Source of the DNA: Octopus bimaculoides
Taxonomy: Eukaryota
Direction: 5' to 3'
DNA length: 63,565 bases
NCBI RefSeq assembly: GCF_001194135.2
Contig: NC_068993.1
Span: forward strand, 17,201,420 to 17,264,984
Positions 2,478 through 17,358 of this stretch are shown piece by piece. The notes below the pieces were generated by a model. It did not search any database and had not been told where the DNA came from. It saw only the letters and a program-made list of their open reading frames with translations. The translations under genes were made by a program, and so were the position numbers. Positions within the stretch are counted from its first letter, which is position 1, and the number at the start of each line of letters is the position of its first letter.

Positions 2478-3030
2478 TTATACTCTGTAATGTTTCAAAC
2501 GCATGGATATAAGGTGTCGAATTTGTTCCAATAACTTACCGAAGATTTCGGCCTTAAATTCATAACACCACATGAATTCAATGAGATGTGATTGAAGTAA
2601 ATTTCGGGCTGTTCCATTTTCTCTTTTGTTGCGATTCTTTACATGCTTCCATAAGCATTCTATGTGGTTGGTTGTGGCAAATGTTACCGGATCAACAAAA
2701 TTTATGGAATGATTTACAGTCAAATGTCTACATCCTAGCTGATTGAGCGTATTATATGAACGCCAGAGGTCAGAAATTATAGTCGTACCAGGCAATATAC
2801 GCTCTTGTATAATTTCTAAAAGAGTGTCTGCCACCAAAACACATCTTGTATCCCTTTCCAAAGCACCAAACACCCATTGCGTTTTAACCCGATGGCCAAC
2901 ATTGTATTTTCTTCTGACAAATGCACTTTCATGTATCTCCACAATTCGGTTTGGCCCTCCGAGCTTAATGTTTTGTGCAACATAATATTCTCCACATATA
3001 TCACGGCAAACATTTCGGTACTACTAAAGA
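2478..3030 (-). mobile_element. Decayed Merlin / IS1595(ISXO2)-like DDE transposase, C-terminal half
   Basis: In-frame reading extends upstream of the listed ORF: ..VCRDICGEYYVAQNIKLGGPNRIVEIHES..RKYNVGHRVKTQWVFGALER..ILPGTTIISDLWRSY..HLTVNHSINFVDP..TNHIECLW. The first catalytic Asp is mutated (EIHES for EIDES) and there is an internal deletion after GALER. Confidence 0.85.
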
Positions 3031-4679: not shown

Positions 4680-6037
4680 GGAGGGGAGACCAAAAGTTCT
4701 TGACAGAGGTTATTAGATGTCCTTAAGTGCTGTATCATGTTTCTGGTCAAGTCCACCTTGGACAATATTATTGCTGTGAATGACTAAGTGTATCTCATAG
4801 CACGTGGCTACTAGGTAGCTGAAACAATTTTTTCTGGTAAGTACAGTCTTTTTGGAGTATTCTTGCTCATTTTCATGATTCTGATATTTTAATTTTTTTT
4901 GTTGCAAATTTTTGAAAAAACAAGTGTCAAGGTTACAAGGAAAATGGAGAAAACTGAGTATCGTGCTGTCATAAAGTACCTTCATTTGAAAATCCATGAA
5001 GATATGGTGAGAACCTTAACAGACAATGCTCCTTCATATGCAACAATCAAACGCTGGGTAAATAAATTCCAGCGTGGCAGGAAGAGTGTGGAAGATGATC
5101 CCACACCAAGGAGACCTCCAACTGCAACCACCGAGGACAACACTGACCTTGCTCTTGGTATGATAATGCAAGATCGTCGAATATCATGTCGTCAGATAGC
5201 CGAGAGACTGGGCATCTCAACTGAAAGAGCAGACAACATTGTGACAAAAGAACTTGTGTTCTCGAAGGTTTCTGCAAGGTGGGTCCCTCGCCTTTTGACT
5301 CCTGAACAGAAATGCACCAGGTGCACTTTGTCCACGAGCAATCTGGAACTGTTTGAAGCTGATGAAGAGAATTTTCTTGCTCGTTTCATTACTATGGATG
5401 AAAGTTGGGTTCATCACTACCAGCCTGAAACCAAAGAACAAGCAAAGCAGTGGAAGCACACATCTTCTCCTAGCCCAAAGAAGACCAGGTTCATTCCTTC
5501 AGCTGGCAAGGTCATGGTGTCAATTTGTTTGGATTCTCAAGGTGTCTTGCTGATCGATTACCTTGAAAAGGGTCGCACCGTGACAGGGATGTATTATTCT
5601 CAGCTACTGAAATGCCTCCAAGAAGCAATCAAAGAAAAATGGCCGGGAATGCTCACCAGAGGTGTCCTTTTTCATCACGACAATCCTCCAGCCCACACCT
5701 CAGTGGTTGCCATGGCAACAATTCGTGATTGTGGATACAAACTTGTTCCCCATCCACCTTATTCACCAGACTTAGCTCCCTCTGACTTTCATCTATTCCC
5801 AAAAATGAAAAAAGCCCTGGCTGGTCACCATTTTGCCAGTGACAATGATGTCATAGATACTGTAGGAAGTTTCTTGGAGTCTCAAACAAAAGAGTTCCTC
5901 CACGCCAGGATAATGGTGCTTCAGCACCGCTGGAGAAAGTGTTCAGCCATCGAGGGGGACTATGTTCAAAGATAAATCATCAGAAGTCTTGTACTACGTT
6001 TTGTTTTTTTGAGGCTCAAGACTTCATACACCCCTCG
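4680..6037 (+). mobile_element. Full-length mariner (Tc1/mariner) transposon, about 1.36 kb, with diverged TIRs
   Basis: Left end GAGGGGAGACCAAAAGTTCTTGA versus reverse complement of the right end CGAGGGGTGTATGAAGTCTTGA. TA follows the right end (6038-6039). Encloses the transposase ORF. Confidence 0.8.
4944..5975 (+). CDS. Mariner DD34D transposase (uninterrupted but probably non-functional)
   Basis: ATG at 4944 (MEKTEYRAVIK). Motifs WVPRLL, ITMDESWV, HHDNPPAH, YSPDLAPSDFHLF, with 34 residues counted between the second and third catalytic Asp. Short apparent in-frame deletion in the first HTH region (LHLK^IHEDM). Confidence 0.9.
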   Translation: MEKTEYRAVIKYLHLKIHEDMVRTLTDNAPSYATIKRWVNKFQRGRKSVEDDPTPRRPPTATTEDNTDLALGMIMQDRRISCRQIAERLGISTERADNIVTKELVFSKVSARWVPRLLTPEQKCTRCTLSTSNLELFEADEENFLARFITMDESWVHHYQPETKEQAKQWKHTSSPSPKKTRFIPSAGKVMVSICLDSQGVLLIDYLEKGRTVTGMYYSQLLKCLQEAIKEKWPGMLTRGVLFHHDNPPAHTSVVAMATIRDCGYKLVPHPPYSPDLAPSDFHLFPKMKKALAGHHFASDNDVIDTVGSFLESQTKEFLHARIMVLQHRWRKCSAIEGDYVQR

Positions 6038-12186: not shown

Positions 12187-14816
12187 TGTACATACACAGA
12201 CGAAAAGTCCTATAAATAAGGCAGAGTATAAACTAAAATGGTGACTTATTTATAGGACACATGGTATATGTGCATGTGAGGGCATAAAATAAAATAAATA
12301 TGTTAATATTTTGATTGCAAATTGAAGTTTAGAAAGGCCTAATGTTAACATGTATGTGTACATGTGTAAAGTTTTTGTTTTATGTTGTACAAAAACATAA
12401 ATGCTCAATACTCCTTTGTGTTAAAAGAGTGTGTGTGTGTGTGTGTGTGTAGCAATAGTAGTTTCATTTGGTTTATACAAGTAACAAATTCATCAAACAG
12501 CAAAGAAAAATGTTCTGCTGATAGATACAAAACCATACAGAAACACAAGAACAAATGGATTTTTGTACCAAGATGGAAGAAGAGGGGAGGAGAAATAACA
12601 AAGAGGGTAAAAAATAAAACAATGATGAAACATCTTAAAACTAGATTTTTGCAATTGTACACCTGTTCCTATTAATGACTGAAATGCTTCACTATGTGGC
12701 ATTTTTCCTCGATTGCTTGATACAAATTGTCTATGGTAATTAGAAGTGGCTCTGAAGCTTTATTTTTCATTTTTATTTAGTATAGTTTCATATAATTTTC
12801 CTTTGTTTACAGTATTTTGCTGTGGACATTTTAACCACCCACTACATTTTTATTATTATACCTTAAAAGAAAAATCTTCAATTTTTTTTGTTTTAAATAT
12901 CAGCTTAAGTATCAATCAAAAGATTTTTGAAATTACAAAACGAAAATATTTTAATCATAAACCAATTTAGAGTAAGGATATTTACAAATGCAGTACATTT
13001 TTCTGCATACAAATCTAATTTGCATATTAAATATTTTGTTTGCATTTGTAATTATATTTTTGTCCTTTAAAATTTTTGAACAAAACAATGCTTTCAAGTG
13101 TAAAGAAAATATATGTATAATTAAAACTTAAACTGCAAACACAAAACATTTATATAGATAGAAACAAGTACTGCAGTTATAAATTATCTAACCCTAATCA
13201 GTTTTTGATTTTTAAAAATTAATTATTTTTCTGCAAATTCTGAATACCTGGTGTTCAAAGTATAAAAGACTGAAGAGTATAATAAAAAAATAGTTAGTGG
13301 TGTGGGAGTAATCCACACTGAAATGAATAAGTGCTTAAGTTTCTCAATAACAATATCTGTCCCTATATATTTGATCAATTGTGACCTTATAAGAAGCCAA
13401 AAAAATCGACGTAGTTATGTCCCTTTATTTGGATTCCTTGGTTACCCATATTTGAACTCGAAGCTTTAAAACTGTACTGAATTCACCACACACACACATG
13501 TCAAGCACAAAATACTGACATATATTATGTATCAATGGAAAAGAGTGTGATATTAGTTTTTGCTTATCCCCAAAGCCAGCTATGACTGAGGAGATATATG
13601 TATGGTCAATGCATATCTATCTAATCTTTTTGTAGTTGTATACTCAGAGTATTCTCTCCAATATGTCATTTTTGTTTAAGATAACAGTATGTGTTCGTGT
13701 GTGTGTATGTGTGGGTAAGCCTCATATTTATTACTGAACTGAAAACTCATTAAAAATGGATAGAAGTTTTGTAATAAATATTGATCCACCTGACAAAAAG
13801 ATGTCATAAGGTCATTACAATTCTTAAACCTACATCGAGCTGTACAAGTTTGTCTCCAGGCAAAGTCGAGCATCTACGATCAGCAAATCAAGCAGATTGA
13901 AGGTTCATTTGCATATTCTTCAGTCTCTTGGACAGTACATTGAAGAAAAAAAGTCTTAGTAGACTGCAACTACATAGTGTCTCTCTCTTTCTCTCATTTT
14001 TATCCCACCATCTCAACTGTTCTCCATTAACATGTACTTTCAGATCTAATCAAGATTATTCCACTTCGGATACAAAAAAAAAAAAAGACAATGTTAAATG
14101 AAACGCTACTTGTTTGCTTTATAGGTTTTATTGTTGTTGGTGATGATGGTGTTGATGTCATAAAATTCTAATAATAATTCTCCAGTTTGAATGATAACAA
14201 TATCTTTTATTTTATTATTTTAATAGTCCTCTTTTGGGTTTATTATAGCCTTTCAGAGATAAAATACTTCGACGACATACAAAACAAATGGGTTTAAAAA
14301 AAAACATAACCAAGCACAAGTGAACCAGCTTTACCTTGTTTGTTTGTTATCTAAAAATGTCAATTATCCCCAGTTACTCGTTGAATATGCTACGCTAACA
14401 TCCCTGATAGAACTACAAATACACTAATTGATGGGAAGTGTCTCTCCGTTCCATCCCTCTTTCTTTTCTACAATTACAAAAGTAATAATAGAACAGGAAG
14501 AGGGAAACAAAACAAAGAGAGATAGGGAAGATATAAGGATGCAGAAAGAGGGGGGAAAAAAAGGGAGTAAGAAGGAAAAGAGAGAGAAAGAGAGATTTTT
14601 TTTTCTCTAGAGACAAATGAGGTAAGTTTTTCTTCAGGTAAAAAATACTGCCAAAAATAATGTTTTGTGTTTGCTTGTTTTTTGCTTCATTTGAACTAAC
14701 AATGTGAAAGAAAACAGAAGAATGAAATGAAAAAAAAAAGAAAAATAAAAAAAAAAAAACGAAAGTGAAATAAAAATAAATGCATATATCACAGTCATCA
14801 AGAATGTTGAAGTTTA
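9800..14816 (-). other. Putative long 3' UTR of the 777-aa gene
   Basis: About 5 kb of AT-rich sequence downstream of the stop codon with no recognisable SINE copy. Minus-strand AATAAA candidates near 10782, 13424 and 14205. The real 3' end cannot be determined. Confidence 0.4.
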
Positions 14817-17150
14817 TCAAAGATTTGAAGGTGCTGTGCCTTGGTTGCTGCTAACAATAAGATCAAGCATATATTCAAGGTGCTCAGAAGATATCTGATG
14901 AAAAACTTCCTGGTGAAATGGGACGTTGGGTAGCAACACTTTGAGAAAGGTCATTGTCTTTTGCTGCAAGGATAAGAGACACTTCTCTGGTGACTTACAC
15001 AAACTTACTTTCATGTCCAGCAACATGGCTTGACCCTGTAAGGTATTAATGTTTATTTTATCCACACTGGTATTGTCTGCACCCATGGAACATAAAGAAG
15101 TGGGTAATGATGATGACGATGAAGACGACGACGAAGAAGATGATGATGATGATAATGATGAAGATGACAGAGGTAATGAAGTTTTTTCAGATGACACTGG
15201 TTTACCTGTCTCCACCAGAGAAATAGCTTCACTGATTAAAACGTCCACATCCTCTGAGTCAGTTCGAATAGACTCCAGAAATGGATACAGTTTTGGAAAT
15301 AATACTGAAAACAGCAAATGTAACTTGTTACGCAATGAGATTAGTCTTAATGTATTCTGAACAAAAGGCTGGGAGTTACCAGGCAACTTATAAGCACACG
15401 ACCGTGATCGCCGCCGCCTCTTTTTCTCTGGTGACGAAGACATACAGCATGGACACATACGCCTTCGCCGTATCCGAGGACCTTCCTGTTCGCAGTTGGT
15501 AAAATAGTTATAGGTATAAGACGGTCGTTTATTGGCCTTGCGTCGTGTCTCTTGCACTTTAGTAATTTTGTTTACGTGTTCTAGGGGGTCAACACTACAG
15601 TTGCTGCCACTGCTAAAGGCAGAGTCTTCAGAAAAACAACCCTGATGGGAGTTCTTGTCATAAGAATTACCAACAGGGTCGCTATCTAACTCGGATTTAA
15701 GTGTTTCAGAGTACATACTATGCTTTAAGCAATCAATGGACTGGTCAGCCAAGTTGACACAGATCTTAGAGTCAGTTGAATTTGCTACCTTCTCTTGATG
15801 CAATAAAAGGCTACCTGTGGTGGTCTTTGGACATTTTTTACTAGGGTCAACTGAGGATTCACTAGAGGCAACGTCATGTTTTTCATTCGCAACAGAAGTG
15901 TTTAGACGGTTTTTTACAGTCTCTGAGTTCTTAAACAGAGAGAATATATTTTTTTCTTCGGACTTCCAATGAACATCACCAGATTGTTGGTTTTCAGGAA
16001 TGCAATGTTCATTTTCAGAAATGGAATTATTATTATTATTATTGGTGCAAGAAGATTTTTTAGAACAAGAATCAGGAATAATTAAGTTTTCAGGTAATTG
16101 ACCATGTTGACATTTATCAGAACCTGGCTTGAAAACATCGCACAATCGCACATTTTTCAGAATGCGACGTTCCCCAGTGGATCCAGTAGACACAGGACAT
16201 TCAAGAGGTTTACGCCAAAAGCGAACATACTTTCGCCTAACAAGGCTGCAGGCAAGTTGTTGTAGTGACTTACTATTTGCTGAGTTGAGGTTTTCTGCAG
16301 ATATAGAGTGTGTTGAGTTATCATTACATTCATCATGGCTAACTTCCACGGAAGAATGGTCTTCCTCCATGTGTCCATTCAGTAATTTTTCTTTCAGTGT
16401 ATTGTCAAGTATGCTGTCGCTGGATTGCGTCACAGAGAAAGGAGTGGGCGATTGTTCAGGTGAGTCAGCAGAATACACAAACAACTTCCGTTTAAATTCA
16501 GTGCTTGGAGACTTTTTCAACTGGGAGTATTTTTTAACAACTCGTTTACAAGTCAATTGTTTGGGTGAGGTCTTACAGGGCACACGGGTCAGTTTCTTGT
16601 GTATGCCCTCTGATAGTTGCCACTCATCAAAACACTCACTAAGACGTTTGATACAGACAGTGGGACGGGCAGAGTTTAGGACACTATTAAAAGGCCCCCG
16701 GATGGTAGAAGTTTCAACAGCCATCACTGATAAAGGAGATCTGTCAGAATTATGGCCACATACAGACTCCTTCAAAGCACAGCTAACATGTCGGCTAACT
16801 TCAGCAGTTAAAGAGTAAACATCATATCGAAGGTGTTCTCCAGATCTTTGTAATTTCGTTATCCAAATTGTAAGATACAGCACAGGACTATACAGAACCT
16901 GAAGGATCAGGTGTTCATGTGCAATACCATGTAGATATTGCACAAGATTGTAAAAAGATGAACAATTTTGTAGTGATTCGTTTGAGTTTGTAACTGGAAC
17001 CAATAATGCTGCCACTTGTGCAAGCCAATGGAAACATGGCAACAGGAATTCATCAATAACAGAAGACAGATAAGCGAAATGGCAACAAGAATGTTGAGAA
17101 AGTTGTTTACAAGGCCATAAAGAGAAATGTTTTACACTTTGAATAGTCAT
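14817..17150 (-). CDS. Uncharacterised 777-aa Ser-rich, probably nuclear protein with two MORC-C-terminus-like helical motifs
   Basis: 2334-nt stop-free frame with first in-frame ATG at 17150 and in-frame stops just upstream. Basic NLS-like clusters (RIRRRR, KKRRRR), a CPCC motif, poly-Asn and poly-Ser tracts, and a strong acceptor (ctattttcag|G) at 17178. Confidence 0.85.
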   Translation of the reverse strand: MTIQSVKHFSLWPCKQLSQHSCCHFAYLSSVIDEFLLPCFHWLAQVAALLVPVTNSNESLQNCSSFYNLVQYLHGIAHEHLILQVLYSPVLYLTIWITKLQRSGEHLRYDVYSLTAEVSRHVSCALKESVCGHNSDRSPLSVMAVETSTIRGPFNSVLNSARPTVCIKRLSECFDEWQLSEGIHKKLTRVPCKTSPKQLTCKRVVKKYSQLKKSPSTEFKRKLFVYSADSPEQSPTPFSVTQSSDSILDNTLKEKLLNGHMEEDHSSVEVSHDECNDNSTHSISAENLNSANSKSLQQLACSLVRRKYVRFWRKPLECPVSTGSTGERRILKNVRLCDVFKPGSDKCQHGQLPENLIIPDSCSKKSSCTNNNNNNSISENEHCIPENQQSGDVHWKSEEKNIFSLFKNSETVKNRLNTSVANEKHDVASSESSVDPSKKCPKTTTGSLLLHQEKVANSTDSKICVNLADQSIDCLKHSMYSETLKSELDSDPVGNSYDKNSHQGCFSEDSAFSSGSNCSVDPLEHVNKITKVQETRRKANKRPSYTYNYFTNCEQEGPRIRRRRMCPCCMSSSPEKKRRRRSRSCAYKLPGNSQPFVQNTLRLISLRNKLHLLFSVLFPKLYPFLESIRTDSEDVDVLISEAISLVETGKPVSSEKTSLPLSSSSLSSSSSSSSSSSSSSSLPTSLCSMGADNTSVDKININTLQGQAMLLDMKVSLCKSPEKCLLSLQQKTMTFLKVLLPNVPFHQEVFHQISSEHLEYMLDLIVSSNQGTAPSNL

Positions 17151-17358
17151 ATGAAGATGCAATCATGTCTAAAAAGACCTGAAAATAGAAAAAAAAAAGG
17201 AGAGGAATGTAAAACACCAATAGCAATAGAAAATAAAAACTTTATTTAGCAAACTAAATAAAGCTTAAACAAAATCAACAATTTTTTTTGTCATGGAAAA
17301 GAAGACTGTGTAAATTAATGTTCTTCCACCTTAGTATGTTATAGCTTACTTTCTGCAC

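What the first reader, a model, noticed from the sequence alone, without database searches (positions are those of the whole stretch)
14840..15360. ATPase-less protein with a tandem pair of MORC-C-terminus-like helical motifs
Seen: two related motifs at the end of the 777-aa ORF, separated by poly-Ser: TLRLISLRNKLHLLFSVLFPKLYPFLESIRTDSEDVDVLISEAI and CLLSLQQKTMTFLKVLLPNVPFHQEVFHQISSEHLEYMLDLIVSSN. From memory, the extreme C-termini of vertebrate MORC3/MORC4 follow the same pattern (L-x-x-LR-x-x-V-x-x-LL-x-x-[IV]-x-P-x-L...I-x-Y-D-S-E-x-VD-x-IL). This tail region is associated with MORC dimerisation. No GHKL ATPase, S5 or CW domain is visible; the rest looks disordered, with NLS-like clusters and an RRRRMCPCC motif. 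Inference: a lineage-restricted adaptor or decoy that could bind or bridge MORC transposon-silencing ATPases, which would be notable in such a TE-rich genome.
Basis: partly seen in the sequence, partly recalled or inferred. Interest (0 to 1): 0.7.

Follow-up and report, generated by a model that had tools for sequence, protein, structure and literature searches.

The report
Duplicated MORC3-tail-like helical domain protein
An octopus gene encodes a mostly disordered nuclear-looking protein. It ends in two copies of a small helical unit that is shared by uncharacterised proteins across molluscs and probably also forms the last exon of vertebrate MORC3, and its function is still unknown.

Summary
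The minus-strand ORF 14817-17162 ends in two helical motifs at the stated coordinates, separated by poly-Ser. Pairwise BLAST does not relate them (E=11), but profiles do. A profile of first copies finds the second copy in all 40 two-copy family members (window 2.5e-8), and the reverse search also works.

An exhaustive HMMER search found 42 proteins (E<=1e-3). All match only the C-terminal module: a basic-CxCC stretch, R1, a variable linker and R2. Every named hit is an uncharacterised mollusc protein (cephalopod, bivalve, gastropod, chiton). A separate clade of 11 comes from unnamed invertebrate sources. None has a Pfam domain apart from one with C2H2 fingers.

With the family alignment, AlphaFold gives pLDDT about 90-97 for both repeats and pTM 0.65, which suggests one six-helix unit. 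Nothing in the PDB resembles it.

The MORC link is supported but not proven. Family profiles hit the verified MORC3 terminal exon end to end (E about 1e-7 for a single comparison, 0 of 20,000 shuffles). It scores 15-18 bits against 11.9 for the best of 177,635 PDB sequences, and hhalign gives P=2e-5.

The protein has no GHKL ATPase, S5 or CW domain, so it is not a MORC. A role as a MORC adaptor or decoy remains untested.

The parts
14817..17162 (-). Whole ORF including the stop codon: 781 codons from TTG, 777 aa from the ATG at 17150, or 635 aa if translation starts at the ATG at 16724 (MAVETSTIRGP...). It is a single uninterrupted exon.
   Evidence: Full-length orthologues exist in Argonauta (65% identity), O. 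vulgaris (an intact 783-codon ORF in the genome) and a decapodiform-like transcript (44%). dN/dS is 0.15 against O. vulgaris.
16725..17150 (-). N-terminal extension of 142 aa. It is weakly conserved but stays open in all four cephalopod sequences, so the true start codon is uncertain.
   Evidence: The alignment shows conservation rising sharply at MAVET, yet 'MTI' at the start is shared. dN/dS is 0.17, from only 8 substitutions. The O. vulgaris annotation starts at MAVET.
16458..16724 (-). N-terminal block that is invariant in cephalopods (MAVETSTIRGPFNSVLNSARPTVCIKRLSECFDEWQL...KKSPSTEFKRKLFVYSADSP) and carries basic, NLS-like clusters.
   Evidence: It has no match in non-cephalopod family members.
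16074..16268 (-). Two more short blocks conserved in cephalopods: LVRRKYVRFWRKPLE and RRILKNVRLCDVFKPGSDKCQHGQLPENLIIP.
15603..15650 (-). Invariant acidic and Ser-rich motif, SHQGCFSEDSAFSSGS.
15399..15518 (-). Basic-CxCC element (YTYNYFTNCEQEGPRIRRRRMCPCCMSSSPEKKRRRRSRS). The family-wide similarity begins here.
   Evidence: Hits from the exhaustive search start at query positions ~251-260, which is this element. Most members carry basic residues followed by C-x-C-C.
15201..15389 (-). Repeat R1 (KLPGNSQPFVQNTLRLISLRNKLHLLFSVLFPKLYPFLESIRTDSEDVDVLISEAISLVETGK): a long helix, a Pro-started short helix, then a third helix. This copy is the one most like the MORC3 terminal exon.
   Evidence: In the AlphaFold model, residues ~11-70 have pLDDT 88-97. 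BLASTP against the MORC3 tail gives E=0.002; the R1 HMM against MORC3 gives 1.4e-7 to 6e-7; hhalign gives P=1.9e-5.
15021..15200 (-). Variable linker containing the poly-Ser run (15108-15167). It is predicted to be disordered.
   Evidence: (pLDDT ~50). Across the family the linker ranges from ~20 to ~410 aa.
14838..15020 (-). Repeat R2 (LDMKVSLCKSPEKCLLSLQQKTMTFLKVLLPNVPFHQEVFHQISSEHLEYMLDLIVSSNQG). It has the same three-helix unit plus an R2-specific V-x-L-C-x-x-P-x-x-C-L lead-in, and it lies at the C-terminus.
   Evidence: In the AlphaFold model, residues ~140-195 have pLDDT 87-96.

Best explanation
The ORF is a real, expressed cephalopod gene. It encodes a largely disordered protein with NLS-like basic clusters, so it is probably nuclear.

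Its only anciently conserved part is a C-terminal module made of a basic-CxCC stretch followed by two diverged copies (R1, R2) of one ~45-60-residue three-helix unit. The two copies are predicted to pack against each other into a single six-helix domain, in effect a covalently linked pseudo-dimer.

The same unit probably occurs once, as the final exon of vertebrate MORC3, directly after MORC3's dimerising coiled coil. There, two chains would have to supply the two copies. The unit is therefore best read as a self-pairing helical module.

In the octopus protein it forms a closed single-chain version. This most likely serves as the folded docking or anchoring domain of a nuclear scaffold, whose lineage-specific disordered N-terminal part carries short interaction motifs.

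Shown: gene reality, the repeat relationship, the family distribution, the absence of MORC enzymatic domains, and a statistically supported resemblance to the MORC3 tail.

Inferred: intramolecular R1-R2 packing (from pLDDT and pTM only), homology rather than convergence with MORC3, nuclear localisation and the scaffold role.
For: - Orthologues and constraint.
- The exhaustive phmmer search gave 42 hits at E<=1e-3, all confined to the basic-CxCC/R1/R2 region. R1 always precedes R2. Every member has two copies except one truncated sequence.
- Cross-repeat profile hits are 40/40 in both directions.
- AlphaFold with the 42-row alignment gives mean pLDDT 77 and pTM 0.65, with both repeats mostly above 90 and the linker near 50. 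With only 4 sequences the same helices appear at lower confidence.
- The MORC3 tail sequence was verified: 100% to P0005 and 98% to 'MORC3 isoform 11 [Pongo abelii]'. ORF fragments show the tail starts exactly at an exon boundary, SLKLRSLRV.
- Family HMMs that contain no MORC sequence align to 41-46 of the 51 tail residues, including the invariant Pro. Per-sequence E is 5e-8 to 1.6e-5. No shuffle out of 20,000 reaches the real score for R1 or the combined profile, and 3 of 20,000 for R2.
- hhalign gives P=1.9e-5, probability 78%.
- The R1 profile scores MORC3 tails at 15.4-17.6 bits, against 11.9 bits for the best of 177,635 PDB sequences.
- The single MORC3 tail matches R units from both copies and from both clades. 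Moving from a single sequence to a profile improved the match from E=0.002 to about 1e-7.
Against: - The MORC3 match is short and scores only 15-19 bits. At PDB-database size that is E=0.02-0.1, and no MORC protein reached E<=1e-3 in the 1.84-billion-protein search.
- Only amniote MORC3 tails were available (Neff ~1.1). MORC4 and invertebrate MORCs were not tested.
- I had no coordinates or PAE for the model, so R1-R2 packing is inferred from pTM alone.
- No experimental datum bears on localisation, partners or function.
Confidence: 0.55

Rival explanations
1. First reader's model. The protein is an ATPase-less adaptor or decoy whose tail units pair in trans with the C-terminal tails of cephalopod MORC ATPases. 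It would bridge or poison MORC dimers and so modulate transposon silencing.
For: The R unit resembles the MORC3 terminal exon. [quoted passage not shown] The window is TE-rich: it holds a mariner and an IS1595-like transposase ORF.
Against: AlphaFold places R1 and R2 in one confidently predicted unit (pTM 0.65), so the units look self-satisfied rather than free. It was not shown that any cephalopod or mollusc MORC carries this tail. None of the 42 family members has a MORC domain, and no MORC appeared in the search. The module is conserved over several hundred million years in proteins with very different N-terminal parts, which fits a general docking domain better than a MORC-specific decoy.
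Confidence: 0.12
2. The R1-R2 module is a genuine, undescribed invertebrate domain, but its likeness to the MORC3 tail is convergence or chance between leucine-rich helix-Pro-helix segments. In that case nothing about MORC biology carries over.
For: The scores are modest (15-19 bits). R2 aligns with MORC3 over only 22 columns in hhalign (P=1.2e-3). The MORC3-tail HMM run against the cephalopod proteins reaches only E=0.04-0.07 per sequence. The resemblance was the reason for choosing the target.
Against: The match runs end to end over the MORC3 exon with the invariant Pro in register. It exceeds all 20,000 composition-matched shuffles and all 177,635 PDB sequences. It improves as family diversity is added, and it is seen with units from both copies and both clades. 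The unit is C-terminal in MORC3, and the module is at or near the C-terminus in many family members.
Confidence: 0.3
3. The module is a zinc-stapled nucleic-acid-binding or protein-binding domain. The CxCC triplet ahead of R1 and the two cysteines of R2's lead-in (LC-x-x-P-x-x-CL) would together bind a metal ion, and the flanking Arg/Lys clusters would contact DNA or RNA.
For: C-x-C-C preceded by basic residues is present in most members, and the C-x5-C pair in nearly all R2 copies. One bivalve member also has C2H2 fingers.
Against: Several members (P0054, P0055, P0061, P0063, P0064) lack the CxCC, and one R2 (P0059) has only one Cys. The CxCC was outside the modelled fragment, so there is no structural support. 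There is no match to any zinc-finger family. This rival does not exclude the best explanation.
Confidence: 0.1
4. The ORF is not a functional host gene. It would be a pseudogene, a chance ORF or a domesticated or decaying transposon gene in a TE-rich region.
For: It is intronless, low in complexity, has no known domain, and has TE ORFs nearby.
Against: Full-length ORFs are conserved in octopus, argonaut and decapodiform-like sequences, and 51 short contigs are consistent with transcripts. dN/dS is 0.15, and the ORF carries only 52 substitutions over 2,343 nt, against ~93% identity for the aligned segment that includes its flanks. There is one copy in the window, and no transposase or other TE domain.
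Confidence: 0.02

Closest known systems
Vertebrate MORC3 (NXP-2), extreme C-terminal exon ([51 protein letters not shown])
   Same: Both share a ~45-residue pattern: L-x-L-x-x-L-R-x-x-V-x-x-L-L-x-x-[IVL]-x-P-x-L, a short spacer, then D-x-x-V-[DE]-x-[IL]-[IL]-x-x-V-[IV]. The Pro is in register, and the unit is C-terminal in MORC3, as the module is in many family members. The profile match is supported by shuffles and by the PDB background.
   Different: MORC3 has one copy, placed after a GHKL ATPase, S5, CW finger and long coiled coil. The octopus protein has two copies and none of those domains. MORC3 lacks the basic-CxCC element and R2's Cys-containing lead-in. As far as I could find, the MORC3 tail has no Pfam or literature description as a domain.
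Uncharacterised mollusc proteins: Patella LOC126818884, Pomacea LOC112573385, Lottia LOTGIDRAFT_157401, Gigantopelta LOC121373935, Argopecten, Mya LOC128213731, Potamilus CHS0354_011324, Liolophura LOC135481237
   Same: They have the same C-terminal architecture, basic-CxCC then R1, linker and R2, at E 4e-20 to 7e-4 in an exhaustive search. The gastropod proteins (570-887 aa) also carry the module at the very C-terminus.
   Different: Their N-terminal parts are unrelated to the cephalopod protein. Lengths run from 570 to ~2,200 aa and linkers up to ~410 aa. Bivalves have two paralogous clades. None has an assigned function.
MORC family GHKL ATPases as a whole
   Same: At most the tail unit.
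   Different: No HATPase_c_3, Morc6_S5 or zf-CW match at E<=10, and none in 17 family members scanned. It is not a MORC.

Membership tests
MORC ATPase family | N-terminal GHKL-type ATPase domain | tested here: not met
   Pfam scan of the 781-aa ORF returned 0 families at E<=10. The PDB sequence search found nothing relevant.
MORC ATPase family | S5-fold domain following the ATPase | tested here: not met
   No Pfam hit.
MORC ATPase family | CW-type zinc finger | tested here: not met
   No Pfam hit. The CxCC stretch is not a CW finger.
MORC ATPase family | C-terminal coiled coil(s) | tested here: not met
   The AlphaFold models show only the short helices of R1 and R2 and no long coiled coil. 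The full-length model has low confidence.
MORC3 terminal-exon unit (not a curated family) | Sequence-profile match over the whole ~45-residue unit | tested here: met
   Family HMMs built without any MORC sequence give E 5e-8 to 1.6e-5 per sequence. No shuffle of 20,000 reaches this for R1 or the combined profile. hhalign gives P=1.9e-5. Scores are 15.4-17.6 bits against a best of 11.9 among 177,635 PDB sequences. At proteome scale the match is borderline (E ~0.003-0.1).
MORC3 terminal-exon unit (not a curated family) | Same three-dimensional fold and pairing mode as two MORC3 tails in a dimer | not testable with these tools
No coordinates were available, and no solved structure covers the MORC3 tail.
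MORC3 terminal-exon unit (not a curated family) | Presence of the unit in MORC4 and in invertebrate (including cephalopod) MORCs | not tested
Only amniote MORC3 tails were retrieved.
Molluscan basic-CxCC/R1/R2 protein family (defined here) | Two R units in fixed order R1 then R2, each recognisable by the family profile | tested here: met
   The window ORF scores 55.7 and 59.9 bits, although its own sequence is part of the profile.
Molluscan basic-CxCC/R1/R2 protein family (defined here) | Basic cluster plus C-x-C-C immediately upstream of R1 | tested here: met
   RIRRRRMCPCC lies at 15399-15518, and the element is shared by most members.

The most novel reading that the evidence does not exclude
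The R unit is an ancient, autonomous self-pairing helical module. Vertebrate MORC3 would have captured one copy as its last exon, while molluscs keep it as a tandem pair in ATPase-less nuclear proteins. Because single units pair, the octopus protein (or an opened form of it) could exchange partners with MORC tails and so tune MORC-dependent transposon silencing in a very TE-rich genome.
Probability: 0.1. Interest if true: 0.8.

Novelty: new variant of a known kind. Interest (0 to 1): 0.5.

Why it matters
If the link holds, the final exon of MORC3 stops being an anonymous 'end of the coiled coil'. It would be one copy of an independent folding and pairing module whose natural two-copy form can be expressed and solved on its own. 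That would give a concrete structural hypothesis for how the MORC3 C-terminus closes its dimer.

It would also define a conserved domain for a set of mollusc-wide proteins that are currently all labelled 'uncharacterized'. For cephalopod biology, it flags a strongly constrained, probably nuclear scaffold protein with a lineage-specific N-terminal half.

None of this yet says what the protein does.

Tried and rejected
- Pfam on the ORF and on 17 family members: nothing except C2H2 fingers in P0027.
- PDB sequence searches with the ORF, the module profile and the R1 profile: only noise.
- Foldseek of the confident module model: 0 hits against the PDB at E<=10 and only noise against viral structures.
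- Word-indexed protein searches found only cephalopod sequences. The family appeared only in the exhaustive search.
- An HMM of the near-invariant amniote MORC3 tails run against the cephalopod proteins picked motif 1 as the best site, but only at E=0.04-0.07. It is too shallow to be decisive.
- Motif 2 against the MORC3 tail by BLASTP gave no alignment.
- I tried to name the organisms of the unnamed 'group 2' clade. Cluster look-ups gave no names, Rfam found nothing on two loci, and one contig's neighbouring brm/BRG1 exon is 79% identical to human, so that source is a non-vertebrate animal. There is no such neighbour in the window.
- The cephalopod N-terminal profile against the other members: no hits.
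- Literature: a DAXX-MORC3 preprint concerns DAXX's SIM, not the MORC3 tail. I found no paper describing the tail as a domain.
- A bacterial promoter/terminator scan was irrelevant to a eukaryotic gene.
- The O. vulgaris 462-aa annotation that lacks R1-R2 does not reflect a truncated gene. The genome there has the full ORF, and the substitute terminal mini-exon lies in the 3' region, where its reading frame is not kept in the window.
Full report
**What is there**

The finding lies in a minus-strand ORF at 14817-17162. It has 781 codons from a TTG, or 777 aa from the ATG at 17150. Pfam gives no family at E<=10 and the PDB sequence search gives only noise. 'ATPase-less' is therefore correct.

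**Is it a gene?**

Word-indexed searches found full-length relatives only in cephalopods:
- Argonauta hians: 857 aa, 65% identity.
- Octopus vulgaris: a 462-aa annotated model, 95% identity.
- An unnamed 824-aa protein seen on 51 short contigs, 44% identity, probably decapodiform transcripts.
- One fragment.

The alignment shows blocks that are invariant across these species, set in otherwise variable, low-complexity sequence. The blocks include basic clusters, SHQGCFSEDSAFSSGS and YNYFTN.EQEGPRIRRRR.CPCCMSSSP.KKRRRRS.

The O. vulgaris genome carries the complete 783-codon ORF. The short annotated model splices from a GT at the first codons of R1 (CCTG|GTAACT) to a mini-exon ~340 nt past the stop. 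That mini-exon's reading frame is not kept in the window.

Against O. vulgaris the ORF has dN/dS 0.15 (34 synonymous and 18 non-synonymous changes), with none non-synonymous in R1 or R2. Conservation rises sharply at a second ATG (MAVET, 16724). However, the 142 codons upstream stay open in all species and have dN/dS 0.17 on few substitutions, so the start codon is unresolved.

**Are the two motifs related?**

BLASTP of one motif against the other is not significant (E=11).

I ran an exhaustive phmmer of the window protein's conserved blocks against 1.84 billion representatives. It returned 42 proteins at E<=1e-3. Apart from the cephalopod orthologues, every one matches only query positions ~251-418, which cover the basic-CxCC stretch, motif 1 and motif 2.

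Within this set, a local jackhmmer run from either motif recruits the other in each two-copy member. An HMM built only from first copies hits all 40 second copies (E 1e-13 to 9e-4; window 2.5e-8). The reverse HMM hits all 40 first copies, the weakest at E=0.019 (window 8e-7).

The motifs are therefore two diverged copies (R1, R2) of one unit, always in the same order. Every member has exactly two copies except one truncated sequence. The linker ranges from ~20 to ~410 aa. The window holds no other copy.

**Who has it?**

Every member that carries a name is an 'uncharacterized' or 'hypothetical' mollusc protein:
- Bivalves: Potamilus, Mya, Argopecten.
- Gastropods: Patella, Lottia, Pomacea, Gigantopelta.
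- Chiton: Liolophura.

A neighbour-joining tree of R1+R2 groups them by class, with two bivalve paralogue clades. It sets apart a clade of 11 unnamed sequences from ENA, JGI and Logan assemblies. One of those sits beside a brm/BRG1 gene whose SnAC exon is only 79% identical to human, so its source is a non-vertebrate animal.

None of 17 members scanned has a Pfam domain, except C2H2 fingers in one. The cephalopod N-terminal ~400 aa matches nothing in the other members. The module is therefore old and widespread, and only the N-terminal half is lineage-restricted.

**Structure**

With 4 sequences AlphaFold gave pLDDT 35, with helices only at the two motifs. With a 42-row family alignment of the last 200 residues it gave mean pLDDT 77 and pTM 0.65. 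Both repeats are at ~87-97 and the linker near 50.

Each unit is a long helix, a Pro-started short helix and a third helix. A pTM of 0.65 for a 200-residue chain with ~75 disordered residues implies a confident relative placement of R1 and R2, that is, one six-helix domain. I had no coordinates or PAE to confirm this.

Foldseek finds nothing in the PDB (0 hits at E<=10) or among viral models. Profile searches of PDB sequences give only noise.

**The MORC claim**

I recalled the human MORC3 C-terminus from memory and checked it. It is 100% identical to a database protein and 98% to 'MORC3 isoform 11 [Pongo abelii]'.

The last 51 residues ([11 protein letters not shown]...EISST) are nearly invariant in the retrieved sequences, which include primate and bird entries. 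ORF fragments that begin in the preceding intron show that they form a separate final exon.

The evidence for a match between the R unit and this tail is:
- **BLASTP.** Window R1 against the tail gives E=0.002 (29% over 55 aa). R2 gives nothing.
- **Family HMMs.** These contain no MORC sequence. They align to 41-46 of the 51 tail residues with the invariant Pro in register: R1 E 1.4e-7 to 6e-7, R2 1e-6 to 1.6e-5, combined 5e-8 to 5e-7 per sequence.
- **Shuffles.** None of 20,000 shuffles of the MORC3 C-terminus or of the tail alone reaches the real score for R1 or the combined profile. Three of 20,000 do for R2.
- **hhalign.** P=1.9e-5, probability 78% for R1, and 6.3e-5 for the combined alignment.
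- **Real-protein background.** The R1 profile's best score among 177,635 PDB sequences is 11.9 bits. MORC3 tails score 15.4-17.6 bits, equal to E 0.02-0.11 at that database size.
- **Breadth.** The single MORC3 tail matches units of both copies and both clades.

Against this, the score is too low to surface in the 1.84-billion search. The shallow MORC3-tail HMM reaches only E=0.04-0.07 on the cephalopod proteins. The target was also chosen because the resemblance had already been noticed.

I rate true homology at about 0.6. MORC4 and invertebrate MORCs could not be tested.

**How it most likely works**

A unit that occurs as a tandem pair predicted to fold on itself, and probably as a single copy right after a dimeric coiled coil in MORC3, is most simply a self-pairing helical module. 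A review reports that MORC3 homodimerises through its coiled-coil and ATPase domains (PMC8627505).

In the octopus protein the pair would form a closed, folded C-terminal domain on an otherwise disordered, basic protein carrying conserved short motifs. That is the anatomy of a nuclear scaffold or adaptor.

Whether its partner is a MORC is unknown. The self-satisfied pairing and the great diversity of N-terminal regions attached to the module argue mildly against a dedicated MORC decoy.

One further feature needs testing: the conserved CxCC and the two cysteines at the start of R2 might bind a metal. Several members lack the CxCC, however.

**Verdict**

This is not a MORC. It is a member of an undescribed, mollusc-wide family, also found in a further invertebrate clade, that is defined by a duplicated helical unit probably shared with the MORC3 terminal exon. 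Its function is unknown.

Noticed in passing
window 4899-5975 (+): A 358-aa ORF with mariner-type transposase features: Transposase_1 (E=3.6e-17), plus HTH_48 and HTH_32. It is a TE copy or remnant ~9 kb downstream of the gene.
   Followed up: partly
window 2478-2942 (-): A 154-aa ORF matching the ISXO2-like/IS1595 DDE transposase domain (E=5.6e-13). This is another TE-derived fragment.
   Followed up: partly
window ~15380-15390 (-) and 14385-14523 (-): A GT donor-like site (CCTG|GTAACT) sits exactly at the first codons of R1. The O. vulgaris annotation uses it to skip R1-R2 and join a mini-exon ~340 nt past the stop. The mini-exon region is 94% identical in the window, but its reading frame is not preserved. 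This could be a minor tail-less isoform or an annotation artefact.
   Followed up: partly
window 16725-17162 (-): The 142-146 codons upstream of the strongly conserved MAVET methionine are open in all four cephalopod sequences and begin with a shared 'MTI', but they are much less conserved. The true start codon (17150 or 16724) is unresolved.
   Followed up: partly
window 15049-15360 (+) and 16129-16818 (+): Antisense ORFs of 103 and 229 aa overlap the gene. The first is an Asp/Glu run that mirrors the poly-Ser codons, and the second also appears in O. vulgaris because it overlaps conserved coding sequence. They are most likely not genes.
   Followed up: no
window 15399-15518 and 14990-15020 (-); family alignment A4: A conserved C-x-C-C lies ahead of R1, and a C-x5-C pair at the start of R2 (V-x-L-C-x-x-P-x-x-C-L). 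This is a possible metal-binding site linking the module's two ends, but several members lack the CxCC.
   Followed up: no
window 15603-15650 (-): The stretch SHQGCFSEDSAFSSGS is invariant in all cephalopod orthologues. It is an acidic, Ser-rich motif that looks like a phosphorylation or degron-type short linear motif. This reading is my own and was not tested.
   Followed up: no
P0028-P0051 (bivalve-type long forms) versus P0035/P0047/P0043/P0036/P0030: Bivalves appear to have two paralogous lineages of the family. One is a 1,600-2,200-aa form with R1 and R2 ~300-400 aa apart and more sequence after R2. The other is a 740-980-aa form with R2 at the C-terminus.
   Followed up: partly
L003 20451-21503 (-): In one unnamed 'group 2' genome the family member lies next to the 3' exons of a brm/BRG1 (SMARCA2/4) homologue, with SnAC and bromodomain exons. 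No such neighbour exists in the octopus window.
   Followed up: yes
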